Assembly: GCA_002269645.1 (NCBI GenBank) | Contig: NIVC01002758.1 | Span: 1-64,000, forward strand | Length of the DNA: 64,000 bases | DNA from: Macrostomum lignano | Taxonomy: Eukaryota | Direction of reading: 5' to 3' | Shown: one piece after another, positions 16,046-34,067 of the stretch | How the letters are laid out: every line of letters starts with the position of its first letter | How positions within the stretch are numbered: position 1 is the stretch's first letter | Notes under the pieces: generated by a model | What the model was told of the DNA's origin: nothing | Database searches by the model: none | The model's input: the letters and a program-made list of their open reading frames with translations, nothing else | Position numbers and translations under genes: made by a program

Positions 16046-16674
16046 CCCTGCGTATTCTGTTGTTGTTTTCATGTTTACATATTTTGCCCAACATTTCTTA
16101 ATCAATTTAACGATCTGAAATCTTACGCAATCAATTTTTAGTTTAACTTAGATTGGAAAAAATCTATATTTTTAATTTTCCTTTTAATCTCCTACTCGTA
16201 ATTGCTTGTTGGCATCTCTAGTTAAAGACACGGATTGTTTTGTTAGGATCCTTTCTTGCTTCTGACATTAATCGCGTACGTCTACGAGTTAAGACATTTG
16301 TTTCCATGCAAAATATACCTATTTTCATGAGTTCAAGCGTATGAAATCAAATTATTGTATTTTATGGTAAAGTTACGAGTACTTTAAAGTCGCGAGCTCT
16401 ATGGAATAATTTATAGGAAACAGCAGATTAATGGCGGAAAATTACAATCTTATTAATTATTAGTCGTCTGTACACAAGAAACTAATGTACTTGTTACACT
16501 ACTCTATACTAAGCTTGTTTCTCATGTCACAAAGATGTCAGCGGTTGGCATTGCTTTGTCCTCAACCGAGCAGCACCGCCTTCTGGTAGCTCCTGAAATG
16601 AAAAAGCATTGAAATATGATTATTTAACTAGGCATGAGTTGTTATTCCGCATCAGATAGATTTCTCACTCAACT

Positions 16675-18494
16675 TGTTCTCCTAAACCTGTCCTACTCAA
16701 CCTGTCCTACTCAACCTGTCCTACTCAACCTGTCCTACTCAACCTGTCCTACTCAACCTGTCCTACTCAACCTGTCCTACTCAACCTGTCCTACTCAACC
16801 TGTCCTACTCAACCTGTCCTACTCAACCTGTCCTACTCAACCTGTCCTACTCAACCTGTCCTACTCAACCTGTCCTACTCAACCTGTCCTACTCAACCTG
16901 TCCTACTCAACCTGTCCTACTCAACCTGTCCTACTCAACCTGTCCTACTCAACCTGTCCTACTCAACCTGTCCTACTCAACCTGTCCTACTCAACCTGTC
17001 CTACTCAACCTGTCCTACTCAACCTGTCCTACTCAACCTGTCCTACTCAACCTGTCCTACTCAACCTGTCCTACTCAACCTGTTCTCCTCAACCTGTCCT
17101 ACTCAACCTGTCCTACTCAACCTGTCCTACTAGACCTGTCCTACTAGATCTGTCCTACTCAACCTGTCCTACTCAACCTGTTCTCCTCAACCTGTCCTAC
17201 TCAACCTGTCCTACTAGACCTGTCCTACTCAACCTGTCCTACTCAACCTGTCCTACTCAACCTGTCCTACTCAACCTGTCCTACTCATATGTCCTACTCA
17301 TATGTCCTACTCAACCTGTCCCACTCAACCTGTCCTCCCTGTCCTCCTAAACCTGTCCCACTCAACCTGTCCTACTCAACCTGTCCTACTCAACCTGTCC
17401 TACTCAACCTGTCCTCCTAAACCTGTCCCACTCAACCTGTCCTACTCAACCTGTCCTACTCAACCTGTCCTACTCAACCTGTTCTCCTCAACCTGTCCTA
17501 CTCAACCTGTCCTACTAGACCTGTCCTACTAGATCTGTCCTACTTAACCTGTCCTACTCAACCTGTTCTCCTCAACCTGTCCTACTCAACCTGTCCTACT
17601 AGACCTGTCCTACTCAACCTGTCCTACTCAACCTGTCCTACTCAACCTGTCCTACTCAACCTGTCCTACTCAACCTGTCCTACTCAACCTGTCCTACTCA
17701 ACCTGTCCTACTCAACCTGTCCTACTCAACCTGTCCTACTCAACCTGTCCTACTCAACCTGTTCTCCTCAACCTGTCCTACTCAACCTGTCCTACTCAAC
17801 CTGTTCTCCTCAACCTGTCCTACTCAACCTGTCCTACTAGACCTGTCCTACTAGATCTGTCCTACTTAACCTGTCCTACTCAACCTGTTCTCCTCAACCT
17901 GTCCTACTCAACCTGTCCTACTAGACCTGTCCTACTCAACCTGTCCTACTCAACCTGTCCTACTCAACCTGTCCTACTCAACCTGTCCTACTCATATGTC
18001 CTACTCATATGTCCTACTCAACCTGTCCCACTCAACCTGTCCTCCCTGTCCTCCTAAACCTGTCCCACTCAACCTGTCCTACTCAACCTGTCCTACTCAA
18101 CCTGTCCTACTCAACCTGTCCTCCTAAACCTGTCCCACTCAACCTGTCCTACTCAACCTGTCCTACTCAACCTGTTCTCCTCAACCTGTCCCACTCAACC
18201 TGTCCTACTCAACCTGTCCTACTCAACCTGTCCCACTCAACCTGTCCTCCTAAACCTGTCCCACTCAACCTGTCCTACTCAACCTGTCCTACTCAACCTG
18301 TTCTCCTCAACCTGTCCTACTCAACCTGTCCTACTAGACCTGTCCTACTAGATCTGTCCTACTTAACCTGTCCTACTCAACCTGTTCTCCTCAACCTGTC
18401 CTACTCAACCTGTCCTACTAGACCTGTCCTACTAGACCTGTCCTACTAGACCTGTCCTACTTAACCTGTCCTACTCAACCTGTTCTCCTCAACC
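16675..18494. repeat. 14-bp satellite (CTCAACCTGTCCTA)n
   Basis: ~1.8 kb array; variant blocks recur about 708 bp apart (CTCATATGTC near 17284 and 17992). Confidence 0.97.
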
Positions 18495-19136
18495 TCCCTT
18501 CTTTCCCAGGCCTCACCAGCCGCCGATAAACGAGTACAAAGGTCCTGCCAGCGTGGCTCTGTGCTGTTGCTGCTGTGTCGGATAAGCCACAGCTGCAGCG
18601 CTGCCGCCCGATCTGGCCAATCCAGAGCCTGTCGGTGCGGTGCAACGGCCGCCGCGGCTTCGTTGACCAGCGCTGCTCGGATGCCGCCTCATGGCTGACA
18701 GGGAGGCTGGAAACAAGGGAGTGGAGTTTTTCGCATTTAAAGTGAGACAGATCGTGCTTGATTAAATTGTTATTTGTTTTCACTTAAAATATTAAAATTA
18801 ATTTTAGTGATTTTAGCTCACTTTCCTGCTTACAGTAGGACAAAAGGCGCGTATTAGTCTTAAGTATTTTGTTAGGGACCAAAAAACAAAGGCAAAACTA
18901 TTAACAAAAAATGGTTTCAGTTAAACATTAGCTTAAGGGTGTAGCACCGTTCTTTAGTTAAATATGTCATTAGCTATGTATTAGCCACAGTTTTTGATTG
19001 CTAAGTTATTAATAAAACGTTATAGCAGAAGATGTACCACCGTTAGCTTGAAATGTTCATTACAATACCTGGTCCACTGAAATGATTTAAAAGTGGTACT
19101 TGGTGTACTTTCTGTAAAAACTAAAAGATACATGTA

Positions 19137-19241
19137 GATAGATAGATAGATAGATAGATAGACAGATAGATAGTAGATAGATAGATAGATAGATAGATAT
19201 TGAATAGACAGATAGATAGTAGATAGATAGATAGATATTGA

Positions 19242-19276
<35 letters not shown>

Positions 19277-19346
19277 TTGAATAGACAGATAGATAGTAGA
19301 TAGATAGATAGATATTGAATAGATAGATAGATAGATAGATAGATAG
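19137..19346. repeat. (GATA)n microsatellite, interrupted
   Basis: Direct reading. Confidence 0.97.
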
Positions 19347-20303
19347 ATTTTTGACAATTTCGGACATTTATGACAGCCAAAGCAATTATGAAGTATGATT
19401 TATGACAGTTATGAAACTGCTATTTTTAGCCATAATAGACTGAGCCGTATGCTCTCCACACAGCCTTCTAGAGAACTTTCTACTCGTACATTTTAGAACA
19501 AGTTTTGTTTGCACACGAATCCCACCCCACTCCCCCAATTAACCAGTAAAATTTACAAATACTAAATACTCAATAACTACAAAGGCCTCATACTGCAGCA
19601 AGCGGATGCTGGAAGCCGAATGCCTACCTCTACCCAACACACCGAAGCTACATTAATACCCCAACTCAACTCGACAGGTACTCGATCCCTATGGATGAGC
19701 AGATTTGAACGCTAATATCAGCAGCTATGGCTACCCCAACACAGACATTCTGACATTCAGGCATCGAGCGATCACGGCAGTACGTAGTGATCTCAAAAAA
19801 TGCCTGTTGCAATTCAACCTTACAAAAGAAGCCCAGAAGTTCTACGTTACTTTTCGAGACTTTTACGTTTTATCCATGTACATGTACGCGATTTTCACCT
19901 GGTCCGGCACACTGAATTCTTCAATTTTCAAGTCAAATAATTCGTACGAAATTAAACTCACAGTTTTCTACTCTAAGTAGACTGAGAATTTTTTGTTTTA
20001 TTTGTAAGTTTGAAAAAAATGAAAAAGGCAGCAGTTAAAGTGAACTCAAATGCTCATCCTCATTTCGTCAGCATATTTGTACAGTTATGTTTTCTAAAAC
20101 GGATTTTCCTGATATATTATTCTTTGAGCCAGAACACGTGGACCTGGTTCAATTCCGTGAGCGGCCACTCTAATTAAAGGCTTATGGACGAAAATTTGCC
20201 GAGTGGTTGTCGTGCGATTCACCCATCAGGGCCACTCCAAAATGCACAGAGTGTACATGCAACAATGGACGATTAGAAAGTCTTATTGACTGCGGAGAGC
20301 TGC

Positions 20304-20704
20304 ACGATAGCATCACGTGATTAAGGTTCAAGGCTGCTGCTAGGGCAATCATCTGATTGGTCGTAGAGACCTGCGCGATAGCATCACGTGATTAAGGTTC
20401 AAGGCTGCTGCTAGGGCAATCATCTGATTGGTCGTAGAGACCTGCACGATTAGCATCACGTGATTAAGGTTCCAGGCTGCTGCTAGGGCAATCATCTGAT
20501 TGGTCGTAGAGACCTGCACGATTAGCATCACGTGATTTAAGTTCAAGGCCGCCGCTAGGGCAATCATCTGATTGGTCGTAGAGACCTGCACGATTAGCAT
20601 CACGTGATTTAAGTTCAAGGCCGCCGCTAGGGCAATCATCTGATTGGTCGTAGAGACCTGCACGATTAGCATCACGTTATTAAGGTTCAAGGCTGCTGCT
20701 AGGG
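20304..20704. repeat. 71-72-bp tandem repeat, ~5.5 copies
   Basis: GCATCACGT at 20310, 20381, 20453, 20525, 20597 and 20669. Confidence 0.95.
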
Positions 20705-22953
20705 GAAAACATCTGACTTGGTGTTAATAACACGTAGTTGTCTCCGACGAAAAGTTATTTGTCTTCAGTTTAAAAACAATTTTTCTGTCACTGTAACTCC
20801 TATAATTCTGTAACTCATTCACTATTCACTACAAACTTTTAATAGCTCACTCAGACTGGTATATGTAACTCGATTTTAAGTGCGCGTATACCTATACTAT
20901 TCGAATATGTACAAGTACAGACGCAACTAACTAACTAACTCCGGCGCCTCAGCCATTGAACAGGCTCTTACGCCACTAAGAATGAATTGGGTTACTAATG
21001 TACACTAGGTTTCTAAGCTAGGCTAAAAGAGACTGTGACCATCAAGCCGAGCAGGCGACACCAGTCGGGCTGAGGGAGGGCCCTACCCCCAGCTGTCGGG
21101 GCGTCACACCTACTCCAAGCACAAAACTAAACCTCCCCGAGGCTAGCAGGGGTTGAGTGAACCAATCAGGGAAGCCCGTGCCTTTTGGGATAGTGTACCT
21201 TCATAATAATGGTCCTAAGACCTCCCCACGGCCGTGGCAACCCGAAGGAGCCTCCCCACCTACTAAACCCCGGGTACTCTTTGCCAAGACAGTCACTTAT
21301 CTTTTAAGCGGCAGGAGGGTTATTCGCGGGACTATTTCACCCTTTGCTTCGCCAACCCGCCATTTAAATTAGGGGCCGTGCCAACGGCCTCGTCCTGGTC
21401 AGACTCAGTCCTGGTTTTGGCACAATCCAGCTTAAACCTAGTCGTTCACCAGCAGACACTCCGGGGGAGACCGTCAGAGCATCAACTGGAACGAGTATAG
21501 GCCTGCCTTCCTATACAGCTACCCACAGCCCTTCCTGATCGACTATTACACTCTAATCCAGCCTACTAACTCATTACAAGCTTTCAGCCAGGCAGAGACA
21601 AGTGTCACAGGGGTACTGCGGTTAGGCGTTAATGCGACAGAGACTCAAATTTTAAAATGTGTTCTGTGAATTAAACACCACGAGGTAGTTTTCATCAACA
21701 TGCATTTGTTTTCAAAAAGCTCTACTGTCAGTAGAGCGTGTAACAAATGAAGCATTTCTCGCTTTAAGGCTTCGAGTTCTCTGGCGCAAACTAAGTATTG
21801 TCAAAAAACGAATGCGAAAACGAAAACAAAGACCACTTATAAAGAAATTTTTAGAGAAAACGAACGTAGCAAACAAAAGAAGAAACTGTAGATTTTTTTA
21901 TTGCATTCAAGCAATTTTTTATTAACGATTTAACAAATAGAAACAGAAAAAGCTAATAAAAATATGTATAAAGACTAACGACTATTTTTAATCTTAAAAT
22001 GGATTTTATCCTACTAACAATGCGAAAAGTCGCACAATAAAAGAGATAAACAAAATAAACAAAAATGCACAACAATTTGACTTAACACAACAGAAAAGCA
22101 AAAACAAAAAACAGAAACAATATTATTTTAAACAAAATAGTATAATTGAAGCTTGTTTTGCTGCTTCATACCTGTTGTAAAATATTGGCAAAAAACTACA
22201 AAAAGATGGAAACCACAAATACAAATACTATAATATTAGTAAGGCTGATTTATAACTAAAAATGCATGTATACTACTGACAGTGCGAAAAAGTCGCGCAA
22301 TACAAAAAGATGGACAGAAAATGCATAAAACACGTTTAAAAACACGCATTTGAAATGAACCAAAGAAAACAAAAAACGCAATGCAAGATTTGAGATAGCA
22401 ACGAAATAACTATTTAGCTACACCTTAATTACCAACTTGGCTACGCCATTAATCATAAAAACTTACAAGTTACATTTACTTTCGATACATATCGGGACAA
22501 ATAGAACAAAGACTCAAATGCTTCACTTCTGAACCTAATGCTATACAAAAACCGAATAGGCTGCAGATTGATATTCTATTTTAATTTAGTTACAAATACG
22601 TTAACCTGAAAAAACCGTAGAGATCAACGGATTTCCATAAGAATTATACGAGAGTACATCGATATAATAGTAATCCAAACTCCGTATGTACTATTGTGCC
22701 TTGCTTAGTCGCCGTGTTGCTTGACTTCTAACGGGAAGGTCGGGGGTTCAAATATTAACTGCTCGACCAAACTGTTTTTTTCTTTTTAATTTGTTTACCA
22801 AAAGAGAGTAAATTTCTCCTCTTTTGTAGTTTGTAATGTTTTTCAATCATAATTTTTGTCTTTAATAAATTTTAATGATACAATAAATGTCCGATATGTA
22901 TCGAAATGATTTAAAACTCTGGATTAGGGAATGTTCATTGATTGGTCAAGTTT

Positions 22954-24540
22954 TTATTGCCGCTTGTTGCTATGCACAGTGCGGATGTGTGTGTTGAGAC
23001 TGCTGTTTCGATTGAAAGCCTTGCCACAGTAGGTGCAACTGAATGGCTTCTCGCCTGTGTGGATGCGCATGTGATCCTTGAGATGGCTGCTCACACTGAA
23101 AGCCTTGCCACAGTAGCTGCAACTGAATGGCCTCTCGCCTGTGTGGATGCGGATGTGTTTCTTGAGATCGCTGCTCACACTGAAAGCCTTGCCACAGTAG
23201 CTGCAACTGAATGGCTTCTCGCCTGTGTGGATGCGGATGTGTTTCTTGAGATCGCTGCTCACACTGAAAGCCTTGCCACAGTAGCTGCAACTGAATGGCT
23301 TCTCGCCTGTGTGGATGCGCATGTGATCCTTGAGATGGCTGCTCACACTGAAAGCCTTGCCACAGTAGCTGCAACTGAATGGCCTTTCGCCTGTATGAGC
23401 TCGCATATGTACAGTCAGATTTACTTCCCCATGAAACCTAGCCTTACACACAGAACAGACGTATCGCCTCTCCAACAGATGCACCAATCTCACGTGAGTA
23501 ATTTTATTCGATTTGCTCTTGAAAACTTTCTCACAAAATCCGCAAATTAAATCGCCACCCGAGTTTAAAATGTCGGCCTCTTCATACAGCGGCCTGTCGC
23601 TAGCGCTGTCGCCGTCTTCGGCTACAATGTTGTACAGTTTGGCCATCTCGTCGCCATAGTAGACAAGAAGCTCGTGATCCGGGCTGATGTCCCGGATAGC
23701 AATGTAATAGACGTTATTATCCCACTGGAAGGCTATCATGTTCTGCTCGCAGAGGTTCCTACTACAATTAACGTAGCGCATCCAATTGGAGAAGCGCATG
23801 TCGGCGGCGTCAACCCATTCGCAAGACTTGTCGCGTCGAATCTCCCAGGCGTAGGAAGACGCCTCAGCGGTGGCTTTGTCGGTGATTCGCTGGCCAAGAT
23901 AGGGTCCGAAGATGGAGCCCCTAGCGATAGGAGCTTCGGCCCACACGCCATTGCCAGCGTGTCGGCCAACAGCGGAGCGGCAGATCCTCATGCCGTCAGG
24001 CAGCGTAAGATCAGAGAAATTCTCAGCAGTACCAAATCCATCCGGCATTTTATTGCTCACCCAGCGTTGATGCAGCTGGCAGCAATCGCCAAACACCTCT
24101 TTGCCGCAGTCATAGCAGTACAAGCTGCGCTCATCTGTCTCCTTGTAGACGCAGGCAGTTTTACCGCGCCTCGGCGGCAGTTGGCGCGGCTCTGTCGGTA
24201 GAAAAGCCGCGATGACAGCAGAGCCAGAACTTCTGAACTTGCTGGAACAGGCAGAAGCAGTTTTGATCTTCTTCTTTGAGTTGGCCAGTGGCTGATAGTC
24301 AGGGTCGCTGTCGCTATCATGTCGGTTGCGCTTCTTTTGCACAGTACAGGCTCGTTTTGGCTGCTTTTGCCTAGCAACTGTTGCCTTGCCAACAGCAGCT
24401 GTTGACGCTGCTCGCTGCTGCTCAACTGGTTGTTGCAGATCTGGGACACCTTCAGCACCAAATAGTTCTTTAATAAGGCGCTCATTTTCTGCCTTCCTGT
24501 TCAACCGCAGCAGCTCATAACTGCTAATGGTTGCTGACAT
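22954..24540 (-). CDS. PRDM9/7-like PR/SET-domain C2H2 zinc-finger protein, 528 aa, single coding exon
   Basis: Zn knuckle LYCYDC...DCCQLH; PR/SET LPDGMRI...GVWAE...FGPYLG...NWMRYVNC...EQNMIAFQ...VYY...ELLVYYGDE; seven C2H2 fingers with TGE(K/R)P linkers. Confidence 0.88.
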   Translation of the reverse strand: MSATISSYELLRLNRKAENERLIKELFGAEGVPDLQQPVEQQRAASTAAVGKATVARQKQPKRACTVQKKRNRHDSDSDPDYQPLANSKKKIKTASACSSKFRSSGSAVIAAFLPTEPRQLPPRRGKTACVYKETDERSLYCYDCGKEVFGDCCQLHQRWVSNKMPDGFGTAENFSDLTLPDGMRICRSAVGRHAGNGVWAEAPIARGSIFGPYLGQRITDKATAEASSYAWEIRRDKSCEWVDAADMRFSNWMRYVNCSRNLCEQNMIAFQWDNNVYYIAIRDISPDHELLVYYGDEMAKLYNIVAEDGDSASDRPLYEEADILNSGGDLICGFCEKVFKSKSNKITHVRLVHLLERRYVCSVCKARFHGEVNLTVHMRAHTGERPFSCSYCGKAFSVSSHLKDHMRIHTGEKPFSCSYCGKAFSVSSDLKKHIRIHTGEKPFSCSYCGKAFSVSSDLKKHIRIHTGERPFSCSYCGKAFSVSSHLKDHMRIHTGEKPFSCTYCGKAFNRNSSLNTHIRTVHSNKRQ

Positions 24541-26029
24541 CTAGAAGTTGTAAACAAATCAAATATCACATTAAAGCTAGTCACATTTTCTGAATAAAAA
24601 TTGTAGCAATACTTCTTAGGCCTATCTTAGGAAGTTAATATGTAAATCCTTCTAGAAAAAATGGACACTTTAAACAAAATTTATCCAATAAAAAAGGATT
24701 TAGCCAAAGAAAGACAAAGAAGTTATATATAGGGCGAAGTCAAAGCTATAATAAAGTGGATATTATAATAACAAAATGCAACTCAATTCTATGAACTAAA
24801 TAGTTTACTACATAGGCCAAAACCAATAGTCTAAAACTTAAATTACTATTATTTGAATAAAATGCATAGCACTTTAGTACCTAAACCCATGTTTAGGGTA
24901 TTTGCACAACTTAATTTTTTCATGTCAGGTTTTCTAGGGATTTTATTTTTTAGGTTCTTTTTAGATTAATCTAACAAATGAAAAATATAGACTACCTAGC
25001 ATATATACATTTTCATAAATTAAACTAAAATTTGCACAAATAACATATTAAGATATCTTTAGTAGTTAGCAAGTTATCAATGGCAAAAACTGATGCTAGG
25101 GGAAAACAAGAGAGCCACAGACAAATCAGACTAAGGCAATAAACTCAGAGTAATAAAGTTGATAAAACTCAACCTGATACAAAAAGATCTGTCTTGATAC
25201 ATATAGTCCTATAGAAGTTTTTATAATGCTATCTAATACCTAGTTTAATTGTTTTGCAATTTTTCAATTAGGTGGCCCACTATTACCTGCTGATAATAGA
25301 TCTATATTTATGGTCATAGTTATCTAGATTTGTTTCTAACTCTTTAGACTTCTTGTTTCTTGTTAACTATTATTATTACTTGCACAAATTTAAATTAAGC
25401 ATAAACAAATAAAACTCTATTTATCAATTTATGCTTCCTAACTTATAATAACAATAGACATGCATTTTGTTCCTTCATGACCTTATTTTGTATTTTTATT
25501 TTTAGGTTGTAAACACTGCATATTTTGAAATAAATTTTAAGTTTTAAAATTGAAAATTAATCATAATTAATTTGTTGAAATGATTCAATAAATGAACAAA
25601 AATTGTAATTATATTGTAGTTTGTGCTATTGTTGCAACATTATCCCATTTGTCCCTGTGAGGGCTATCAGAAAATTTTTGCTTATTAGTCAATAAAATTA
25701 AAACTAAGTCATATTAAAAGATAAAACTTATCAAAAAACTCTATTAGCATCTCATTACTCAAAATATTTGCCACTAGCCTCAAGGCATTTTTCCCACTGC
25801 AGCACAAGTCCATCAATGCTGGCACTAATGCTGCTCTTTGTTGTGGCTGCTATTCCTTTGTGCTAAGCCTCATTGGCTTCTTCTTTGCTGCTAAAATGCT
25901 GGCCTTGCATTGTCTCCTTGATCCTAGGGAAGAGGAAAAAGCTAGCTCGTACATGGGCTAAGATACAATGAAAAAGGCCAGTGCAGAAGAATCTCCCAGC
26001 CCCATAAGGAGATAGTTTCAATCAACAAT

Positions 26030-26345
26030 TTTTTTGCGATACAGAGCAGCTTGTCAGGATTGGACCCTGGGCATGCAAGCTTGGCCTTTTGTTGTGATTG
26101 GCTCTTTGCACCTTGCACAACACTTTCAAAAAATAGTCACCATTTACTATCTGGCTGGCAAGAATAGCCTGATCAAAGATGATGCCTTTGTGATTAAAGA
26201 AAGTCACATGCATGATTTTCAGCTGAGCAATGCTCTTTGCAGCCTTCACTGGCCTTGGAGAGCCAGGCTGGCACCTATATGCACTTTGCCACTTCAGTTT
26301 AGCCTCCCACAAATGCACCCAAGTCTCATTACAAGCCACAATTCT
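26030..26345 (-). pseudogene. Mariner transposase remnant (catalytic region)
   Basis: NETWVHLWE...PGSPRPVKA...MHVTFFNHKGII...VNGDYFLKVL...KRPSL. Confidence 0.8.
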
Positions 26346-27344
26346 CTAAAGAAACTGAACTCCCTTGCAACTGGCCCATTCCATATAAGATGGACATATT
26401 TGGAAAATAGAAAAAAGTCAATCTTTTTGCTTGTCATTGCCTTATCAGCCAATTTTTTTTACCAAATCTTTTTTGTATGTAATGTATACAATCTAAGAAA
26501 AAATAAATGATAAAATGTTGGATTAGTATGTTATCAATTGGCAAAAGTTATTTTTGTAAAAAAATGGACATTTTCTAAGCAAAAGACATCATTAAGTTTA
26601 TGTACCTTTTAAAAACAAATAGAAAGCTTTAGAAGGTTAAAACAAACTATTTATAAAATTATAATATTTGCATCATCAGATAAAAACATTAGCAACCATA
26701 TAATCTATTATATTTTTAATACATTAGTACTTCAAAGTTACTGAATTGATAGAAAAAAATATGTTACGACCATAATGTTACGACCATAAGGTTGCCTTTT
26801 CTTTTGTATCTTTTTTGCCTTTTTGAGTTTTATTTTCTAATAAAAGAGTATGACTTCTAAAGATGTTCTTAGTCAAATTTAAAAAAAATTATTGCAAAAT
26901 ATCAAAAATGAAAAATGTTATAAGACTTTTACCTTTTAGTTTCTATATGTCAAAAATCCTGTTGTTACGACCATAAGTGCCATTCAAGGGTTAATAGCAT
27001 CTATACTAATGATGATATCTATATGAAACTTTATAAATATATTCTTGACAAAATAATCTTTCATTCAAAATATTGGTTTAGTATATTCTATTATTAGATT
27101 TCATTTTATAAGTAAAAATAGTCTGTCACGTCATACATGCGCAACTGCTGGCCGACCTGGCCGATTCGGCCACCGTAAATCGTGGCTGACCAGGGGTAAG
27201 TCGCAAAATTGAGTCAACCAAAAACAGAAAAACACAAGAACCAAGAAAGGCAAGAGGAAAGCGAAAGAAAGAGCAGTTCAGGGAAAATAATGAAGCAAAA
27301 GAAAAACAATTCGCAAAAGAAGCAAACTAAGTTGTAAAAATAAT

Positions 27345-28232
27345 CAGGTAAGTCGCAACAGGAATCAGGTAAGTCGCAAAAGGGTTAGGTAAGTCGCAAA
27401 AAGAATCAGGTAAGTCGCAAAAGGATCAGCTAAGTCGCAAAAGGGTTAGGTAAGTCGCAAAAGGGTTAGGTAAGTCGCAAAAGGGTTAGGTAAGTCGCAA
27501 AAGGGTTAGGTAAGTCGCAAAAGGGTTAGGTAAGTCGCAAAAGGGTTAGGTAAGTCGCAAAAAGGATTAGGTAAGTCACAAAGGGTTAGGCAAGTCGCAA
27601 AAGGATTAAGTAAGTCGCAAAAAGGATTAGGTAAGTCGCAAAAGGGATTAGGTAAGTCGCAAAAAGGATTAAGTAAGTCGCAAAAAGGATTAGGTAAGTC
27701 GCAAAAAGGATTAAGTAAGTCGCAAAAAGGATTAGGTAAGTCGCAAAAAGGATTAGGTAAGTCACAAAGGGTTAGGTAAGTTGCAAAGGGTTAGGTAAGT
27801 CGCAAAAGGGTTAGGTAAGTCGCAAAAAGGATTAGGTAAGTCGCAAAAAGGATTAAGTAAGTCGCAAAAAGGATTAGGTAAGTCGCAAAAGGGTTAGGTA
27901 AGTCGCAAAAGGGATTAGGTAAGTCGCAAAAGGGTTAGGTAAGTCGCAAAAAGGATTAGGTAAGTCGCAAAAAGGATTAAGTAAGTCGCAAAAAGGATTA
28001 GGTAAGTCGCAAAAGGGATTAGGTAAGTCGCAAAAGGGATTAGGTAAGTCGCAAAGGGTTAGGTAAGTCGCAAAAGGGATTAGGTAAGTCAAAAAGGGTT
28101 AGGTAAGTCGCAAAGGGTTAGGTAAGTCGCAAAAGGGTTAGATAAGTCGCAAAAGGATTAGGTAAGTCGCAAAAAGGATTAAGTAAGTCGCAAAAAGGAT
28201 TAGGTAAGTCGCAAAAAGAAGCAACTAAGTCG
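27345..28232. repeat. 20-23-bp minisatellite (GG(G/A)TTAGGTAAGTCGCAAAA)
   Basis: About 40 copies, inside the TIR element. Confidence 0.95.
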
Positions 28233-28479
28233 CAATAAGAGGGAAGTAAGTCACAATCAGAGGCAATCAGGGGGTAGTAGGTGCAAGTGTGGCAGGAGAG
28301 CAAAAACAGAATAGAAGCCTTCAACCACAGACAAGATCTTTGAAATCAGAAGCCCGCGTCATTTCTTTAACTCTGGAGCAGGGGTTGGCAAACTCCGGCT
28401 CGCGAAGCCCCTCTATCTGGCCCTCGCCCCTCGGGTTCTTTGAAACTTCCTAACTACGAGTAGCAAGGTTGGTGTCTCT

Positions 28480-29150
28480 TCAACTCTCATCTCTCTCTCT
28501 TCTTCTCTACCTTGCCTCCCCTCTTCTCTCCCCCCTTTTCCCTCTTCTCTCTCCTCTCATTTTTACTCTCCTCTCTTCTCCCCCTTTCTCTCTACCCTTT
28601 CTCCTCAATGCCCTCTTCTCTCCTCTTATCTTCAGCAAAAATATGTGCATATTTTCTTACTTCAAAGTAGAGAAAATAGAAGATTAGAGATAAGCAAACA
28701 GAGGAGAGGCGAGCGATGCGATGGGAGAAAAGATAGAAGAGGAGAGAAAAGCTGAGGGAGGAAAAAGAGATAAGAGAGAAGAGGAGATGCGAGAAAAGAG
28801 GAAAGAAAAGATGATAGATGAGATCAGAAGAGAGGAAAGAGGAAAGAGGAGAGAGTAGATGAGAGAAGAGAGGATAAAGAGGAGATGAGAGGAGAGTGAA
28901 GAGAGGAGAGATGAGAGTAGAAAAGAGAGGAGAGATAATGAGAGAGTAGAGTGGAGAGAGACGAGAGGGAAGATAAGATGAGAGAGTAGAGTGGAATGGA
29001 GAGAGACGAGAGAGAGATAAGAATGTAGAGAGGAGACAGAAGAGATAGGAGAGGAGAGGAAAGAGAGGAGAGAGGAGAGGAAAGAGAGAAGGGATAAGGG
29101 ATGAGAGAGAAAAGAAAAAGAGGATGAGAAGATTGAGGAATGGAGAGAAT
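28480..29150. repeat. CT-rich then GA-rich low-complexity tracts
   Basis: Direct reading. Confidence 0.85.
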
Positions 29151-29769
29151 TTGCAAAGGCCTCAAATCTTAGTTTAACATGCATTACTCCCATCTTTGCC
29201 TTTTTCCTAACTGTTAACAAGTTTTTGTTTGAGCATGACTTCAAATTTAGAATCTATGCAAAAATAGTTCCGGGAATTAGAATTCAGTGGTTTAAAAATC
29301 TGTGGGTTTTCACAGCTTGTATCTCTACTGGATTCGTATTCTGCATCTGATGAGCCATCTGAATCAGGGCTCTCATCTTCCATGCCAAATCGTCTAGCAA
29401 ATCGTTCTTGAGCTATAGGTCACACTGTATTCACTTCACTTACTTCTGGACATTCATGAATCATGACTTTTGTAGTATGCTCACTACACTGTACTGACAA
29501 TTTACTAATTGCTTCATGCCGCCACTAGATGACATACTGATTAGCTGTTATAAAAACGCGAAATCTGCACGCAGCACTAATTAGCTGGCGAGGCATTTAG
29601 CTTTAAAAATATGGTCATAGTTACTCCTGCCGTTTACCTAAAGTTTTTGCTTGGCTCTTTCATAGGTAAGTCGCATTTTTTATCGAAAACTAAGTCGCAC
29701 GGCCAGCGTAATTTCAGAAGTTGCGCATGTATGTGTCACGTTACGACCATAATTATATGGAATGGCCCA

Positions 29770-30090
29770 ACTGTATCTTTGCAGATGAGTGCGAGCTGCA
29801 CTGAGAGTTATGTGGTAGACTTTCTGCTTCTCTGACAGGATATGAGACACCCACTTTGCGCAAATCTTCCTGACTTTAAGATCTTCAGTCAGAACTTTAT
29901 GGATTGTCATGAGACATGCTAGTAGACTCAGCCAGCTGATGAGTGGTAACACAGTGATCCTCTTGCATAGCAGCTTCCACCTTTTGTACCAATTGTGTTG
30001 TTTGCACTGAACAGGGCCTTCCACTTTGAGGTTTGTCTTGAATGTCTTCTTTGTCATCAAGAACACTTGCCATCTAGCAACAAACAATGT
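29770..30090 (-). pseudogene. Mariner transposase remnant (second HTH / linker)
   Basis: TIHKVLTEDLKVRKICAKWVSHILSEKQK. Confidence 0.75.
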
Positions 30091-30620
30091 CATATGACAG
30101 GCAAGAGTCTGCTATGGCTTGATACATGATTCCATGTCTCTGTTGGAAACAGTCTAAGCAAGGCATGGAACTTGATGATAGTTGAATAGTCTTCTTTAGA
30201 GAAGCTTTTTTGCAAAATGGAGGTGTTTATAATAGGACTTATAAATTTTCTAATGTGAAGCTAGGTTTCAAGATTTTAAGCCAAATTTTTTGTAATAGGC
30301 ACATTAAATACCAGGCAATAGCCTCAGCTTAGCTGCATTTTTTATGTGAATTATAAAAAAATATCAGTCAATAATCAAAACTTTTCTAATAGCACTTATA
30401 ATATCTAGAAACTTTTATCACTTTTGCATATCCCATATAAATTATAAGTTAAATGTCCGAATTAAGTCAAAGAAATTTATTCATTTTTTTTGCAAATTTC
30501 TATAGGCCCCTAGGCCTAACTAAATATTTTTTGCTTAAAATTAATATATTCATAGTATAATTATTAGCCATATTATTAATAAAGGCTTTTACTTTTAATA
30601 GTTTTAATTATATTATAATA

Positions 30621-31616
30621 TGAGGGGTATCTGAAAAGTAGTGATACTTCTAACCCTAGCTCTCATTCTATAGCTTTTTGTGATTTAAAATTTTATGAAC
30701 TGATAGTGGCAAATCTTTTCTACAGACTGCTTGTTGAATTTTTAAATTGATACCAGAGAACAAAAGTTATACCCATGAAAGTAACAGTACCTGTATCACA
30801 GAGTTACACAAATTATAGGCTGAGCTTCATGAGATCCATGCCGAATAAGCTTCAATGAATTGTTGATTTTGGTTTTTCCAACCTGTCAGCAATTTCTGAA
30901 ATGGTCATTTGGAGGTCCTTGTCAAGAAGATCCAGAATAGAGTCCGCTAGTACATCAGGTTGATGAATGTATGGCCTCTTTATCCAATGCTAATCTGCCA
31001 AGTCAGTCTATCCCTCTAAACTGCTCAATCCATTGATAAACTATCATTTTGCTGACCGCAAAGGATCCGTGCACAGAGCACAGTTTTGCATGAATTTCTG
31101 AGGCACTATGGCCAGCACCCCAAAGAGTGAAGATGGTACTTTGCTGAGCAACAACTGAGTGCATATCCATGTGTGTTGTCAAGTATAGGCAATGAAATCA
31201 TGAACGAATTGCAAAATGCAAGCTCTTCTGTTTGCAAGCAAAGTAATGAATTTAATGCTTTATATTTCTGTGCATGATCTTGTCCATAGATAAATTTCAG
31301 TCAGTCATAGTGAGCATCATTTTGAAATTGGGCTTTGGTATTGCTTCAATAAGACATTTATCAATGCTTTCTTAATAAATAAGTGCAGAAGTCAACTATT
31401 ATAAATTTTGTTATAGTTTGTGTAACTTTATGGTACAGGTAGGCCCTACTGTTACTTTCGTGGATATAACTTTTGTTCTCTAGTACCAATTTTAAAAATT
31501 CAAAAAGCAGTCTATAGAAAAGATTTGCCACTATCAGTTCATAAAATTTTAAATCACAGGAAGCTATAGAACGAGAGCTATGGTTAAAAGTATCACTACT
31601 TTTTGGACACCCTTTG
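30621..31616. mobile_element. Mariner-derived MITE with ~170-bp TIRs and an internal transposase N-terminal remnant
   Basis: 30621-30790 is an imperfect inverted copy of ~31445-31616; TA flanks both ends; the internal minus strand reads IVYQWIEQFRG and LLDKDLQMTISEIADRLGKPKSTIH. Confidence 0.8.
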
Positions 31617-33256
31617 TACAATATCTTTGTTATAATCCTATAGAAATTTCTAAAACACTATTAATTTCTCTATAAATGTATACAAGGCAATCATGCAAAC
31701 CCAGCTAGTAATCAAGTTTTTTGACTCCTCAATATTTAATAACAAAGCAAACAAATGAACTAGGCCTACTATCTATAAATCTTACTTATTTTGCCAATTT
31801 GCCATGCTATAGGGCCTAGGCCTATCTTAAGTTCTACTTTTCAATCTTTTGCTACTAGGTGTGTGGATCCTAAGTAAATGTTTTTGTATTACCAATATTG
31901 GCACTGCATTGATTTTACAAATTTTGTATAAAAAGAGTAGGCCTATAAAATTTTATGTATGAATTGATATTAAATTTTGGGTAGACCTTAATCTTTAAGC
32001 CTAAGCCCTAAGTATAGGCCAATCATTTATTTAAAGCAGAGAATAGACTGTAGGCCTAGGCCTATGACAATGACTAGGTAATAGTAGGGCCTGAAAATTG
32101 ATAGGGGGGCCTAATGATAAGACTGCATTTACTATGAAACACATGATATGGCCTAGGCCTACACATGATAACACATGCAAGATTTTATAACTTTACAGGG
32201 GTCTAGTCAAGCCTCCAGGTGTTCAACCTACCTAGTCTTCTAATAATACTAATCCTCCTATACCTTTTTTGCTTTTAAACTCAGCTTAGCTTTTCCTGTC
32301 GCTAATATACATAGCACAATAAGCAAGTAGACAGAAACTTTGATACAGAAAATCCAATTTCTTTCAAACAAATGTCAATTTTGCCTAAATCTTTGCATAT
32401 TATGACTTCTGCGAGTGACGATTCCTGAACAGAATGCGTGTTTTTTTCAGTCATGGGAGATCCTACTAACCTACTCGGACTATTCGGCCTGCCCATAGAG
32501 AATTGCTTAAAATAATGCGCACACAGTTTGTATTATCCAAAGCGTTACGTGTATTAACAAAAAACATAAATTTTTTAAACAACATCTAAAACATATAAAA
32601 AAATATATCTAAAACTTGACAACATTTAAATACTTCTCCAAAGATTTTTGAAATAGTATTTTTATATATTTAGAACACTTCAAAGTGTTTACTAAAGAAG
32701 ACATAAAATCAAGGGATTATTTTTTTAATTTCGGAACTTAGTAAAAATAATGAAGATTGCAAGGGGTCGACGTAATAATCAATGGTTTATTTGAGTTGAA
32801 TAATAGTGTTTTCTTCTAATATACGCAGTAAAACTATATTCTGCAACAGTAGGCTTATAGGCTATGCAGCTATTTAAATGTACCATCAAGTGATAAATAT
32901 CTATAATCCTTTCCTTTGACCCTCTGCTCTGTGGAGGACGTGCTCATTTATTCATATGAAAATGATAATAACCTTTCACAACAGAATAACAACGCTGGAT
33001 CAGTGGTGGATCCTGCAGGATTTTTAAAGTAGGGGGAGTGCATGCGGACCATGCAGCCAAAATTTTTGTGTTAGCCGAGAATACATGTACATGTAAGCCC
33101 CAAATCAGACCAAAATTGCAATACCCCGGAAAAAGAGGGAGGCAAAAGAGGGGAATTTATTCCTATTGAAACTATGGATTGTTGGTCAGGTTAGTATTCA
33201 TAAAATATAGTATTAGATCATCGTGCTACTTTGTTGCGCTACATGTAGATCTAGAT

Positions 33257-33302
<46 letters not shown>

Positions 33303-33350
33303 GATAAATAGATAGATAGATAGATAGATAGAGATAGATAGATAGATAGT

Positions 33351-33446
<96 letters not shown>
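33257..33446. repeat. (GATA)n microsatellite
   Basis: Direct reading. Confidence 0.97.
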
Positions 33447-33450
33447 CCGC

Positions 33451-33606
33451 TCACCATTCGCCCTGCTGCTCGGTCAGCCGCCGCACCTGAAAGCCGGACT
33501 CGGCCAGGACTCTCTTGTTGTGGTCCCTTGCTGACACTTCCTGCCCGGCCGCCTCTCCCGACGACGACTCCATGGCAGGAAGCGCGAAGTTTCGGGTGTG
33601 TCTGTA
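33451..33606 (-). other. Candidate exon of an unassigned gene
   Basis: GC-rich segment with acceptor TGTCTACAG and donor GTGAGC; [43 protein letters not shown] further donor (GTGAGT) lies near 33740. Confidence 0.4.
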
Positions 33607-34067
33607 GACAGCAGGAAAATTCCATGCCTCAACTCTCAAAACAAGTTGCTAATTGTTGGCTGAACTCAGCCGAAATCGGACACTCTTGACTTTTCTGCCT
33701 ACATGCAGCTACACTAAAAGTGCAATTCGAGGCACTCACCGCTGGTTGGTGCCACCTGCTCTAGAGTAGCAGCCCTCGATAGAAGTAGCTGAAAATTATT
33801 TGAATAATCGTAATTATAAAGCCCAACAATAATTTCCAGATTGCAGAAACCTTTTTTGAACTCCCTCACGGCATGCTTCATCCCTCACGCCATGCTTCAT
33901 CCCTCACGCCATGCTTCATCCCTCACGGCATGCTTCATCCCTCACGCCATGCTTTCTTTCCTCTCCCTGATCCTCCCCAATCTTTCCTCTTTGAGCATAC
34001 TTCTAGCTTCTAGGAAATATCTTCACGTCATCAAGCCAGCTCCATCAAGAATCCCCCCCCCAATCTG

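What the first reader, a model, noticed from the sequence alone, without database searches (positions are those of the whole stretch)
22954..24540. PRDM9-like gene in an invertebrate-type genome with catalytic tyrosines intact
The domain order is Zn knuckle, PR/SET, post-SET finger, then the C2H2 array. Residues equivalent to human PRDM9 Y276 (FGPY), Y341 (VYY) and Y357 (LLVYYG) are present. Established knowledge: PRDM9 positions meiotic hotspots through H3K4me3/H3K36me3 in vertebrates. Inference: this may be a hotspot-type PRDM9 or a lineage-specific analogue. The uninterrupted coding exon suggests a retrocopy or intron loss.
Basis: partly seen in the sequence, partly recalled or inferred. 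Interest (0 to 1): 0.82.

Follow-up and report, generated by a model that had tools for sequence, protein, structure and literature searches.

The report
Flatworm PRDM9 gene, fast-evolving fingers
This is an intact PRDM9-family histone-methyltransferase gene of the flatworm Macrostomum lignano that has no detectable KRAB domain, yet its DNA-reading zinc fingers have changed very fast between two copies of the locus, the pattern known from the vertebrate PRDM9 that positions meiotic recombination hotspots.

Summary
Window 22954-24540 (minus strand) is one uninterrupted 528-aa ORF. Its order is Zn knuckle, PR/SET, post-SET C2H2 finger, then six tandem C2H2 fingers. Y214, Y279 and Y295 align with human PRDM9 Y276, Y341 and Y357.

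The window is Macrostomum lignano, or a very close relative. A colinear second copy, GenBank PAA57651.1, is 92% identical. By sequence, NJ tree and predicted fold the PR/SET domain belongs to the PRDM7/9(/11) clade.

The comparison of the two copies is new:
- Residues 1-359 are under strong purifying selection (dN/dS about 0.1; PR/SET 0.025).
- 33 of the 40 amino-acid differences lie in the finger array, and 24 of those at helix positions -1 to 6.
- The framework DNA of fingers 3-6 is identical in both copies.

This is PRDM9-type concerted evolution plus diversification of DNA specificity.

Evidence against a full hotspot-type PRDM9:
- No KRAB domain is detectable in the ORF or elsewhere in the window.
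- The SSXRD is at best degenerate.
- The array is short.
- Published RNA-seq shows the sister copy weakly expressed and not enriched in gonad regions.

Retrocopy hallmarks are absent. The verdict is a real, functional, KRAB-less PRDM9 orthologue. A role in hotspot positioning is possible (about 0.3) but unproven.

The parts
22954..24540 (-). Complete single-exon CDS, 528 aa plus TAA stop, of the PRDM9-family gene
   Evidence: ORF list. Pfam PR/SET plus C2H2. It is 92% identical over 528 aa, without gaps, to M. lignano PAA57651.1.
24541..24546 (-). TTCTAG directly before the ATG. This is a splice-acceptor-like site, a candidate SL trans-splice or 5'UTR-intron acceptor. Its TAG is also an in-frame stop.
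   Evidence: Sequence. It is conserved in the second copy. The M. lignano trans-splice acceptor motif is [T/C]TNCAG and the spliced leader ends in ATG (PMC8629364). Its use is inferred, not shown.
24460..24522 (-). N-terminal helix, aa 7-27 (SYELLRLNRKAENERLIKELF). It may be a vestige of the second helix of an ancestral KRAB-A.
   Evidence: AF2 predicts helix 7-27 with pLDDT about 66, followed by disorder at 33-131. A profile built from 47 homologues' ancestral KRABs gives only 0.9 bits, with 79 of 2000 shuffles as good. Not significant.
24130..24174 (-). Degenerate SSXRD-like motif PRRGKTACVYKETDE, aa 123-137, just before the Zn knuckle
   Evidence: A profile built from 62 homologues' pre-knuckle segments gives 6.8 bits, E 4e-4 for one sequence. 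Pfam SSXRD finds nothing. The acidic PDDDD tail is missing.
24070..24126 (-). Pre-SET zinc knuckle, aa 139-157 (SLYCYDCGKEVFGDCCQLH)
   Evidence: It aligns with YLYCEMCQNFFIDSCAAHG of PRDM9 structures. Coordinates.
23626..24018 (-). PR/SET methyltransferase domain, aa 175-305, with Y214, Y279, Y295 and the NWMRYVNC motif
   Evidence: AF2 pLDDT 80-92. Foldseek to mouse PRDM9 4c1q gives target-normalised TM 0.85-0.88 and rmsd 2.3-2.5 A. dN/dS is 0.025 between the copies.
23464..23550 (-). Post-SET C2H2 finger, ZF1, aa 331-359
   Evidence: Regex and Pfam zf-C2H2. It holds the position of PRDM9's isolated post-SET finger.
23380..23463 (-). ZF2, aa 360-387, a divergent first finger of the tandem array
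   Evidence: It differs by 44 nt from the core units.
23044..23379 (-). ZF3-ZF6: four 84-bp minisatellite units in order A-B-B-A (helix VSSHLKD / VSSDLKK)
   Evidence: TRF finds 84 bp x 4.5 at 95%. Units differ by 0-5 nt, all differences nonsynonymous, at helix positions 3 and 6, at +8, and in the linker. The framework is identical to the second copy while the helix blocks differ by 7-12 nt.
22954..23043 (-). ZF7, aa 500-528, the terminal finger (helix RNSSLNT), plus the stop codon
   Evidence: Its helix block is closest to internal fingers of the other copy.

Best explanation
This is a functional orthologue of the PRDM7/9 subfamily in the flatworm Macrostomum lignano. It is encoded by one exon.

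The protein keeps these parts:
- the pre-SET zinc knuckle;
- a PRDM9-type PR/SET domain with all three catalytic tyrosines;
- the post-SET finger;
- a short tandem C2H2 array encoded by an 84-bp minisatellite.

It has lost a recognisable KRAB domain and keeps at most a degenerate SSXRD.

Most likely mechanism:
- The finger array reads a short DNA motif.
- The PR/SET domain then trimethylates H3K4, and probably H3K36, on neighbouring nucleosomes.
- The DNA specificity is not fixed. The array is homogenised by unequal exchange or gene conversion, while the base-contacting residues are replaced rapidly, so different copies of the locus must recognise different motifs.

Shown here:
- family membership;
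- intact catalytic residues;
- purifying selection on everything except the recognition helices;
- diversification and shuffling of the helices.

Inferred:
- the enzymatic activity;
- the DNA binding;
- the biological purpose.

The evolutionary regime is that of hotspot-specifying PRDM9. I rate a role in positioning meiotic breaks at about 0.3.
For: Species and second copy:
- P0001 (UniRef, named PRDM9, M. lignano) is 99% identical over the N-terminal part.
- PAA57651.1/BOX15_Mlig000687g1 is 528 aa and 92% identical.
- Its contig is colinear with the window over about 21 kb. Flanks are 95.8-97.1% identical.

Family:
- PDB sequence search over aa 1-344 gives PRDM9 113.7 bits against PRDM11 78 and PRDM2 69. 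The PR/SET core alone gives 104 against 71 or less.
- Of 1987 HMMER hits, the named top ones are PRDM9-like or PRDM7_9 proteins of Priapulus, Mytilus, Dreissena, Lytechinus, Asterias, Branchiostoma, Latimeria and amphibians.
- NJ bootstrap is 98/100 for PRDM9-like + PRDM11 against PRDM2 and MECOM, with the worm inside.
- AF2 plus Foldseek: the top six matches are PRDM9.

Catalytic residues: Y214, Y279, Y295 and NWMRYVNC.

Functionality:
- aa 1-359: dN 0.0084, dS 0.085, p = 2e-8.
- Knuckle plus PR/SET: 1 nonsynonymous against 10 synonymous differences, p = 1e-6.

Finger dynamics:
- 84-bp units differ only nonsynonymously.
- Between copies, 33 of 40 amino-acid differences lie in the array, 24 of them in helix positions -1, 1, 2, 3, 5, 6. 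Fisher p = 3e-13; a conservative position-level test gives p = 0.0012.
- Helix pN is 0.49, against pS about 0.08 in the codons outside the finger array and 3% divergence in the flank.
- The framework DNA of ZF3-6 differs by 0-1 nt across all eight units.
- Helix blocks have moved between array positions.
- The proportion of diversity at -1, 2, 3, 6 in the homogenised core is 0.53 (window), 1.0 (second copy) and 0.71 pooled.
Against: - No KRAB: the Pfam scan is empty even at E<=10. A profile of 47 ancestral KRABs from homologues scores the N-terminus at 0.9 bits, p about 0.04, and finds no exon anywhere in the window, which includes 39 kb upstream.
- The SSXRD match is weak.
- Only four homogenised fingers plus three divergent ones.
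- The diversification rests on two full copies plus one broken gene model (P0001). Concerted evolution means the many differences stem from fewer independent events.
- Whether the two copies are alleles, duplicated-chromosome copies or sibling-species orthologues is not known.
- I could not rank the array statistic against other C2H2 genes of the species.
- The tree used distances and only three outgroup families.
- Expression of the sister copy is low and not gonad-enriched (PMC7336406).
- No enzymatic or binding data exist.
Confidence: 0.8

Rival explanations
1. Full hotspot-type PRDM9. The protein binds its motifs in early meiotic prophase and writes H3K4me3 and H3K36me3. It thereby directs SPO11 breaks to those sites. 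Erosion of the motifs drives Red-Queen turnover of the fingers. The KRAB function is dispensable here or is supplied by the remaining N-terminal helix and SSXRD-like motif.
For: - PRDM7/9 membership and intact tyrosines.
- The finger array shows concerted evolution plus extreme diversification at DNA-contact residues at only about 8% synonymous divergence.
- In vertebrates, rapid finger evolution is reported essentially only for PRDM9 orthologues thought to direct recombination (PMC5519329).
- Similar signatures occur in Nematostella, Lottia and Capitella (PMC2779102) and in cnidarian full-length copies (bioRxiv 10.64898/2026.09.07.749791).
Against: - No KRAB is detectable and the SSXRD is degenerate.
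- The vertebrate data tie the hotspot role to all four domains (PMC5519329).
- The array is short.
- The sister copy shows 12, 14, 23 and 18 reads in the head-only, +testis, +ovary and whole-worm fragments. It is classed 'Non-Specific' and carries no germline_FACS label (PMC7336406).
- The presence of ZCWPW1/2 was not checked.
Confidence: 0.3
2. PRDM9-derived chromatin regulator without a meiotic break-positioning role. It would be a sequence-specific methyltransferase or transcription factor whose fingers chase fast-changing genomic targets, such as transposons or the abundant satellites of this genome, in a KZFP-like arms race. This is comparable to the partial PRDM9 orthologues of teleosts and the truncated paralogues of cnidarians.
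For: - The architecture is partial, without KRAB.
- Expression is low and not restricted to a body region.
- The genome neighbourhood is dominated by satellites and TE fragments. More than half of the M. lignano genome is repetitive (PMC5730564).
- Partial orthologues are conserved for other, unknown functions in vertebrates and cnidarians.
Against: - In vertebrates, partial orthologues do not show rapid finger evolution and often lose the catalytic tyrosines (PMC5519329). Here the tyrosines are kept and the PR/SET domain is under very strong constraint.
- Within-array homogenisation combined with contact-residue turnover is characteristic of PRDM9 rather than of ordinary C2H2 genes.
Confidence: 0.4
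3. Processed retrocopy or decaying pseudogene of a multi-exon PRDM9 gene located elsewhere.
For: The 1587-bp CDS is uninterrupted in a genome that averages 4.9 introns per gene.
Against: - There is no poly(A) tract and no flanking direct repeats.
- Two colinear copies keep the full frame with dN/dS 0.1, and 0.025 in PR/SET.
- No other M. lignano cluster above 50% identity appeared in the 1.84-billion-protein search.
- An acceptor-like site sits right at the ATG and is conserved.
- The gene is in the transcriptome-based annotation.
Confidence: 0.04
4. The difference between the two finger arrays is an artefact, caused by mis-assembly or mis-polishing of a minisatellite or by ectopic conversion from unrelated zinc-finger genes. 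On this reading it says nothing about selection.
For: - Minisatellite finger arrays are often mis-assembled (discussion in bioRxiv 10.64898/2026.09.07.749791).
- The older gene model P0001 has a broken array.
Against: - Both arrays have the same length and frame, and perfectly regular 84-bp units.
- The differences are confined to 30-nt helix blocks, while the 54-nt frameworks are identical. Random assembly error would not give that.
- The array is only about 0.5 kb, well within single long reads.
Confidence: 0.05

Closest known systems
Complete (KRAB-SSXRD-PR/SET-ZF) PRDM9 of mammals, snakes, salmonids, and the full-length orthologues of cnidarians and molluscs
   Same: - Zn knuckle.
- PR/SET domain: best sequence and fold match; mouse 4c1q target-normalised TM 0.85-0.88.
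- Y276, Y341 and Y357 equivalents.
- Post-SET finger.
- C-terminal tandem C2H2 array encoded by an 84-bp minisatellite, with concerted evolution and diversity focused on the DNA-contact positions.
   Different: - No detectable KRAB-related domain. Only one N-terminal helix remains.
- The SSXRD is reduced to a weak PRRxxxxxxYKExxE motif without the acidic tail.
- There is no long linker between the post-SET finger and the array.
- Only 6 tandem fingers, 4 of them homogenised, against typically 8-15 (from my own knowledge).
- The CDS is a single exon, against about 10 coding exons in vertebrates (from my own knowledge).
- No evidence of germline-restricted expression.
Partial PRDM9 orthologues lacking KRAB and/or SSXRD: teleost PRDM9-beta-type genes (PMC5519329) and cnidarian truncated 'XSZ' paralogues (bioRxiv 10.64898/2026.09.07.749791)
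   Same: The architecture is PR/SET plus fingers without KRAB. The gene is conserved under purifying selection.
   Different: - In vertebrates these partial genes show no rapid finger evolution, and many carry substitutions at the catalytic tyrosines.
- The flatworm gene keeps all three tyrosines, and its fingers diversify at the contact residues.
PRDM11, the vertebrate-specific relative of PRDM9
   Same: It has a Zn knuckle plus PR domain, and it falls in the same clade in the NJ tree (98/100 for PRDM9-like + PRDM11).
   Different: - It scores much lower: 70-78 bits against 104-114 for PRDM9.
- By my reading of the 3ray alignment, PRDM11 has F and W (IYF, RVWYS) where PRDM9 has Y341 (IFY) and V355 (LVWYG).
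- The worm grouped tightly with PRDM11 in only 8 of 100 bootstraps.
KRAB zinc-finger proteins (KZFPs) of tetrapods
   Same: They have tandem C2H2 arrays whose contact residues evolve fast in conflict with genomic repeats.
   Different: KZFPs have no PR/SET domain, act through KRAB-TRIM28 and diversify mainly by gene duplication. Here there is a catalytic SET domain, no KRAB, and within-array homogenisation.

Membership tests
PRDM7/9 subfamily | PR/SET domain closer to PRDM9 than to any other PRDM class | tested here: met
   - PDB phmmer on the core: PRDM9 104 bits, against PRDM2 70.8, PRDM11 70.3, PRDM14 65.9, MECOM 62, PRDM4 61, PRDM12 61, PRDM5 58, PRDM1 56, PRDM10 48 and PRDM16 41.
- NJ bootstrap 98/100.
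- Foldseek top six are PRDM9.
- Limits: a distance tree, three outgroup families, and no PRDM6, 8, 13 or 15.
PRDM7/9 subfamily | Pre-SET zinc knuckle (C-x2-C-x7-C-x2-H) | tested here: met
   C142, C145, C153/C154 and H157 align with the PRDM9 knuckle in 4c1q and 4ijd.
PRDM7/9 subfamily | Post-SET C2H2 finger followed by a C-terminal tandem C2H2 array | tested here: met
   Seven C2H2 fingers: ZF1 at aa 331-359, then six in tandem at aa 360-528.
Hotspot-type (complete) PRDM9 | Catalytic tyrosines equivalent to Y276, Y341 and Y357 | tested here: met
   Y214, Y279 and Y295 are aligned. Also conserved in the second copy and in the metagenomic relative P0014.
Hotspot-type (complete) PRDM9 | N-terminal KRAB(-related) domain | tested here: not met
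   - Pfam finds nothing at E<=10. Pfam also missed the clear ancestral KRAB of a frog PRDM9-like protein, so I built a profile from 47 homologues.
- That profile scores the worm N-terminus at 0.9 bits, with 79 of 2000 shuffles as good. Only 11 residues align.
- No exon was found in the whole window.
- AF2 shows one helix only.
Hotspot-type (complete) PRDM9 | SSXRD motif before the Zn knuckle | tested here: inconclusive
   Pfam SSXRD gives no hit. A profile from 62 homologues gives 6.8 bits, E 4e-4 for a single-sequence test, in the correct position. Only 15 residues align and the acidic tail is lost.
Hotspot-type (complete) PRDM9 | Minisatellite finger array with concerted evolution and diversity concentrated at positions -1, 2, 3, 6 | tested here: met
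   - 84-bp units at 95%.
- All within-array differences are nonsynonymous.
- Between copies, helix pN is 0.49 against framework dN 0.029 and background pS about 0.08.
- Enrichment p = 3e-13, or 0.0012 at position level. P is 0.53-1.0 in the homogenised core.
- Helix blocks are shuffled between positions.
- Not ranked against other C2H2 genes of the species.
Hotspot-type (complete) PRDM9 | Expression in meiotic germ cells | tested here: inconclusive
   Only published tables for the sister copy Mlig000687.g1 were available. Counts are 12/14/23/18 in fragments A-D, classed 'Non-Specific', with no germline_FACS label (PMC7336406). Counts are low and come from 36-bp reads, with no cell-level data. 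This leans against germline restriction.
Hotspot-type (complete) PRDM9 | H3K4me3 and H3K36me3 methyltransferase activity | not testable with these tools
   Inferred only, from conserved residues and strong purifying selection.
Hotspot-type (complete) PRDM9 | Co-occurrence with the readers ZCWPW1 and ZCWPW2 (and HELLS) | not tested
   None of these genes is in the window, and I had no reliable query sequences. See next steps.
Hotspot-type (complete) PRDM9 | Binding sites coincide with meiotic DSB or crossover hotspots | not testable with these tools
   This needs ChIP/CUT&Tag and break or recombination maps.
Processed retrocopy | Intronless copy with a poly(A) remnant, flanking target-site duplications and a multi-exon parent gene | tested here: not met
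   It is intronless. There is no poly(A) tract and no flanking direct repeats. No second M. lignano cluster was found. The structure is shared by both colinear copies.

The most novel reading that the evidence does not exclude
A flatworm uses a KRAB-less PRDM9 to position meiotic recombination hotspots, and Red-Queen turnover of the fingers is already visible between duplicated or allelic copies within one species. That would show PRDM9-directed recombination in Spiralia. It would also show that the KRAB domain, essential in mouse, is not universally required. The species involved allows transgenesis, RNAi and live imaging of the gonads.
Probability: 0.27. Interest if true: 0.88.

Novelty: new member of a known kind. 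Interest (0 to 1): 0.6.

Why it matters
1. A comparative survey found no Prdm7/9 member in Schmidtea or Schistosoma and inferred loss in the platyhelminth lineage (PMC4760075). This gene shows that the early-branching Macrostomorpha kept it, so the loss lies inside the phylum.

2. In vertebrates, rapid finger evolution and intact catalytic tyrosines go together with the complete four-domain architecture. This is the main argument that KRAB and SSXRD are needed for hotspot specification (PMC5519329). The flatworm gene breaks that association. It has no detectable KRAB, yet it has intact tyrosines, a tightly constrained SET domain and fast-diversifying fingers. Either the hotspot role can work without KRAB, or the 'PRDM9-type' finger signature can arise from another selective pressure. 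Both would be informative.

3. How PRDM9 works outside vertebrates is an open question (bioRxiv 10.64898/2026.09.07.749791). M. lignano has transgenesis (PMC5730564), RNAi and transparent gonads, so the question is directly testable.

The gene itself is already in databases under an automatic 'PRDM9' name. I found no paper that discusses it.

Tried and rejected
- Pfam scan of aa 1-183 for KRAB and SSXRD at E<=10: nothing.
I read the frames by eye and then searched all 2905 stop-to-stop ORFs of the window with a home-made ancestral-KRAB profile. No hit was better than 6 bits. The one hit with a 'KAVEEYF' motif (62955-63092, minus strand) has no EEW, no donor site and lies 38 kb away, so I rejected it.
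- My eye alignment of the N-terminus to the mussel ancestral KRAB ('ATISSYELLRL' against 'ASLSDYEKLRY'): only marginal support, p about 0.04. I do not claim it.
- Retrocopy marks: no flanking direct repeats or poly(A). A 14-nt inverted pair flanking the gene (22785-22798 / 24550-24563) is what AT-rich sequence gives by chance.
- Paralogues in the window: none (tblastn).
- Spliced-leader RNA gene in the window: none. tRNA and Rfam: none.
- Exact-sequence look-ups of the window protein and of P0001: not on record.
- Search with the metagenomic relative P0014 for more flatworm relatives: only zinc-finger-driven hits.
- Literature on PRDM9 in Macrostomum or for Mlig000687: no main-text hits. No hits in the supplements of PMC5816591 and PMC5730564.
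- A full PRDM tree: I could take only PRDM9, PRDM11, PRDM2 and MECOM sequences from the PDB alignments. The other classes are covered only by bit scores.
Full report
**1. What is there**

The ORF lister returns one ORF at exactly 22954..24540 on the minus strand: 528 aa, ATG to TAA. Pfam finds a PR domain (PRDM2_PR, E 1.3e-34, aa 192-304), SET, and seven C2H2 fingers. Reading the protein gives this layout:
- a low-complexity N-terminal third;
- a zinc knuckle, C142-x2-C145-x7-C153/C154-x2-H157;
- PR/SET at about aa 175-305;
- a post-SET C2H2 finger at aa 331-359;
- directly after it, six tandem fingers at aa 360-528.

HMMER alignments to PRDM9 crystal-structure chains (mouse 4c1q; human 6nm4 and 4ijd; E 1e-31 to 2e-30) place worm Y214 (FGPY), Y279 (VYY) and Y295 (LLVYYG) opposite the tyrosines of HFGPY, IFY and LLVWYG. 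These are human Y276, Y341 and Y357.

**2. Whose genome**

The best database match to the N-terminal 359 aa is a UniRef entry named 'Histone-lysine N-methyltransferase PRDM9' from Macrostomum lignano, 99% identical. Its 90% cluster also holds GenBank PAA57651.1 (BOX15_Mlig000687g1, 528 aa) from assembly GCA_002269645.1. The 21.6 kb around that gene (locus L001) is colinear with the window:
- The 170 bp before the ATG are 95.8% identical.
- The 2.1 kb after the stop are 97.1% identical.

So the window is M. lignano or a very close relative, and L001 is a second copy of the same locus. The Mlig_3_7 assembly is known to contain 180 Mb of duplicated blocks at least 95% identical, because the sequenced line carries extra large chromosomes (PMC5730564). 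I cannot tell whether the two copies are alleles, duplicated-chromosome copies or sibling-species orthologues.

**3. Which PRDM**

- Sequence scores: with the PR/SET core alone, PRDM9 structures score 104 bits. Next come PRDM2 at 70.8 and PRDM11 at 70.3, and PRDM14, 3, 4, 12, 5, 1, 10 and 16 score lower.
- Wider search: an exhaustive HMMER search of 1.84 billion representatives gave 1987 hits. The named top hits are PRDM9-like or PRDM7_9 proteins of Priapulus, Mytilus, Dreissena, sea urchin, starfish, amphioxus, coelacanth and amphibians. All 150 listed hits score above what any non-PRDM9 human PRDM scores.
- Tree: in an NJ tree of PR domains, the PRDM9-like sequences plus PRDM11 form a clade against PRDM2 and MECOM in 98 of 100 bootstraps. 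The worm sits inside on a long branch next to the Priapulus protein.
- Fold: an AlphaFold2 model from a 17-sequence alignment has pLDDT 80-92 over PR/SET. Its six best PDB matches are all PRDM9. Mouse 4c1q gives target-normalised TM 0.85-0.88 and rmsd 2.3-2.5 A.

The refutation test 'grouping with another PRDM clade' therefore fails. The caveat is a distance tree with only three outgroup families.

**4. What is missing**

Pfam finds no KRAB or SSXRD in aa 1-183 even at E<=10. Pfam's KRAB model also missed the obvious ancestral KRAB of a frog PRDM9-like protein, so I built profiles from the homologues themselves.

- KRAB: a profile of 47 ancestral KRABs scores the worm N-terminus at 0.9 bits, and 79 of 2000 shuffles do as well. 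Only 'ATISSYELLRL' aligns, with 'aelseyEKlrY'. The same profile finds no exon in any frame of the window, which extends 39 kb upstream of the gene. The one suggestive ORF was rejected on inspection. AlphaFold predicts a single helix at aa 7-27 followed by 100 disordered residues, where ancestral KRABs form two helices (PMC8835667). KRAB is therefore absent or vestigial.
- SSXRD: a profile of 62 pre-knuckle segments matches 'PRRGKTACVYKETDE' in the right place with 6.8 bits (E 4e-4 for a single test). The acidic tail is gone. The SSXRD is at best degenerate.

**5. The finger array, within one copy**

TRF reports an 84-bp unit in 4.5 copies with 95% matches. Fingers 3-6 differ from each other by 0-5 nt. 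Every difference is nonsynonymous, and the differences fall at helix positions 3 and 6, one residue after the first histidine, and one linker residue. The order is A-B-B-A.

**6. The finger array, between copies: the main new result**

The two 528-codon genes align without gaps. The codon analysis is, the Fisher tests.

| Region | dN (or pN) | dS | Note |
|---|---|---|---|
| aa 1-359 | 0.0084 | 0.085 | ratio about 0.1, p = 2e-8 |
| knuckle + PR/SET | 0.0021 | 0.084 | 1 nonsynonymous vs 10 synonymous, ratio 0.025, p = 1e-6 |
| finger framework | 0.029 | 0.027 | |
| helix positions -1, 1, 2, 3, 5, 6 | pN 0.49 | | 43 nonsynonymous changes on 88 sites |

- The helix value is about ten times the synonymous divergence outside the fingers (p = 5e-15) and more than ten times the flank divergence.
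- Thirty-three of the 40 amino-acid differences lie in the array, and 24 of those in the helix positions. Fisher p = 3e-13. A conservative test that counts each unit position once gives p = 0.0012.
- At the DNA level, the 54 framework bases of fingers 3-6 differ by 0-1 nt among all eight units of both copies, while the 30-base helix blocks differ by 7-12 nt between copies.
- Helix blocks have also changed place. The terminal finger of the second copy carries a helix 3 nt away from the window's internal type A. The window's terminal helix is nearest to the other copy's internal fingers.
- The older gene model P0001 combines the N-terminus of one type with fingers 2 and 7 of the other, which hints at a third haplotype.
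- The share of array diversity at positions -1, 2, 3, 6 (the statistic of PMC5519329) is 0.53, 1.0 and 0.71 for the homogenised core of the window copy, the second copy and both pooled. It is 0.26-0.45 if the divergent end fingers are included.

This is the PRDM9 pattern: concerted evolution of a minisatellite plus rapid replacement of the base-contacting residues. Three caveats apply. Only two full copies are available. Homogenisation means there were fewer independent events than differences. There is no ranking against other C2H2 genes of the species.

**7. Gene structure**

- The CDS is uninterrupted in both copies.
- Directly before the ATG lies TTCTAG, with an in-frame TAG, preceded by a T-rich stretch. 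This is conserved in both copies.
- About 30-39% of M. lignano genes are trans-spliced to a leader that ends in ATG, at acceptors of the form [T/C]TNCAG (PMC8629364; PMC5730564). A trans-spliced or 5'UTR-spliced single coding exon is therefore a reasonable reading, but it is inference.
- I found no poly(A) remnant, no target-site duplication and no parent gene, so 'retrocopy' has no positive support.
- Intron loss is plausible. The species averages 4.9 introns per gene. The nearest relative outside M. lignano is an unnamed 2.4-kb metagenome contig, 49% identical, with all three tyrosines and only three fingers. Its homology starts right after a '...cccgcag' acceptor-like site at the beginning of the PR domain.

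**8. Expression**

The second copy is gene Mlig000687.g1 of the transcriptome-based annotation. A re-analysis of positional RNA-seq (PMC7336406, Table S8) gives these read counts:

| Fragment | Reads |
|---|---|
| A, head only | 12 |
| B, through the testes | 14 |
| C, through the ovaries | 23 |
| D, whole worm | 18 |

It falls in the lowest expression class, is labelled 'Non-Specific', and carries no germline or neoblast label in Table S6. This does not show soma-only expression, but it does not show the gonad enrichment expected of a meiosis-specific gene. Counts are low and the reads were 36 bp.

**9. Interpretation**

Shown:
- It is a bona fide, selectively maintained PRDM7/9-family gene.
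- It has intact catalytic residues and no detectable KRAB.
- Its DNA-recognition residues turn over fast while everything else is conserved.

Inferred:
- It binds DNA through the fingers and writes H3K4me3, and probably H3K36me3, nearby.

Open: why the specificity changes.
- In vertebrates, fast fingers and intact tyrosines go with the complete four-domain gene and with PRDM9-directed recombination. KRAB-less orthologues have slow fingers (PMC5519329).
- The flatworm gene mixes the two states. I give about 0.3 to a true hotspot-positioning role. I give about 0.4 to a non-meiotic role, such as chasing repeats in a genome that is more than half repetitive. The rest goes to other roles or artefacts.

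**10. Known or new**

PRDM9 orthologues with fast fingers were described in Nematostella, Lottia and Capitella (PMC2779102). KRAB-bearing ones were described in mussels (PMC8835667) and in 28 cnidarians (bioRxiv 10.64898/2026.09.07.749791). For flatworms, the only survey found no Prdm7/9 in Schmidtea or Schistosoma and inferred loss in the lineage (PMC4760075). The M. lignano protein is in databases under an automatic PRDM9 name, but I found no paper that discusses it. It is a new member of a known family, with an unusual combination of features.

Noticed in passing
L001:1-17867 (second copy of the locus; corresponds roughly to window 16600-34000, minus strand): The GenBank annotation of the M. 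lignano contig has a 372-aa gene whose span runs across the whole PRDM9-like gene on the same strand. So the PRDM9-like exon may sit inside an intron or transcriptional unit of another gene.
   Followed up: no
L002:688-1428 (JGI metagenome 3300040801, contig Ga0450804_2990646): This is the closest relative outside M. lignano, 49% identical. It has a PR/SET domain with all three tyrosines and only three non-repetitive fingers. The homology begins right after a '...cccgcag' acceptor-like site, which suggests an intron that the M. lignano gene lacks. The organism is unknown.
   Followed up: partly
window 20295-20722: A 72-bp tandem repeat, 5.9 copies, lies 2.2 kb downstream of the gene. The second copy of the locus has roughly twice as many units (L001 about 13961-14749), so the haplotypes differ in copy number.
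   Followed up: partly
window 26025-26339 (-): A fragment of a mariner-type transposase (Pfam Transposase_1, E 1e-4) lies 1.5 kb upstream of the gene.
   Followed up: partly
window 2167-4485 (-): A long ORF with reverse-transcriptase and RT-thumb domains (RVT_1, E 6e-15): a retrotransposon remnant.
   Followed up: partly
window 16667-18495, 27346-28216, 34621-36033, 37499-38657, 54998-57668 and others: The window is packed with satellite arrays: 14 bp x 132, 21 bp x 43, 33 bp x 15, 24 bp x 25, a CT-rich 22 bp x 51 and 24 bp x 110. They cause the strong GC-skew swings and several long spurious ORFs. For example, ORF 56202-57218 owes its weak 'phage gp5 repeat' Pfam hits to the 24-bp satellite.
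   Followed up: partly
window 22942-23550 (+) and 22970-23374 (-): Long ORFs antisense to, and out of frame with, the finger array (202 aa and 134 aa) are by-products of the repeated 84-bp unit, not genes.
   Followed up: yes
window 23044-23379 and L001:11161-11496: In both copies the four homogenised fingers are ordered nearly symmetrically: A-B-B-A in the window and C-D-D-E in the second copy, where E differs from C at two helix positions. I have no explanation. It may reflect how units are exchanged.
   Followed up: no
window 22785-22798 and 24550-24563: A 14-nt inverted pair, 93% complementary, brackets the gene almost exactly. In this AT-rich sequence it is probably chance.
   Followed up: partly
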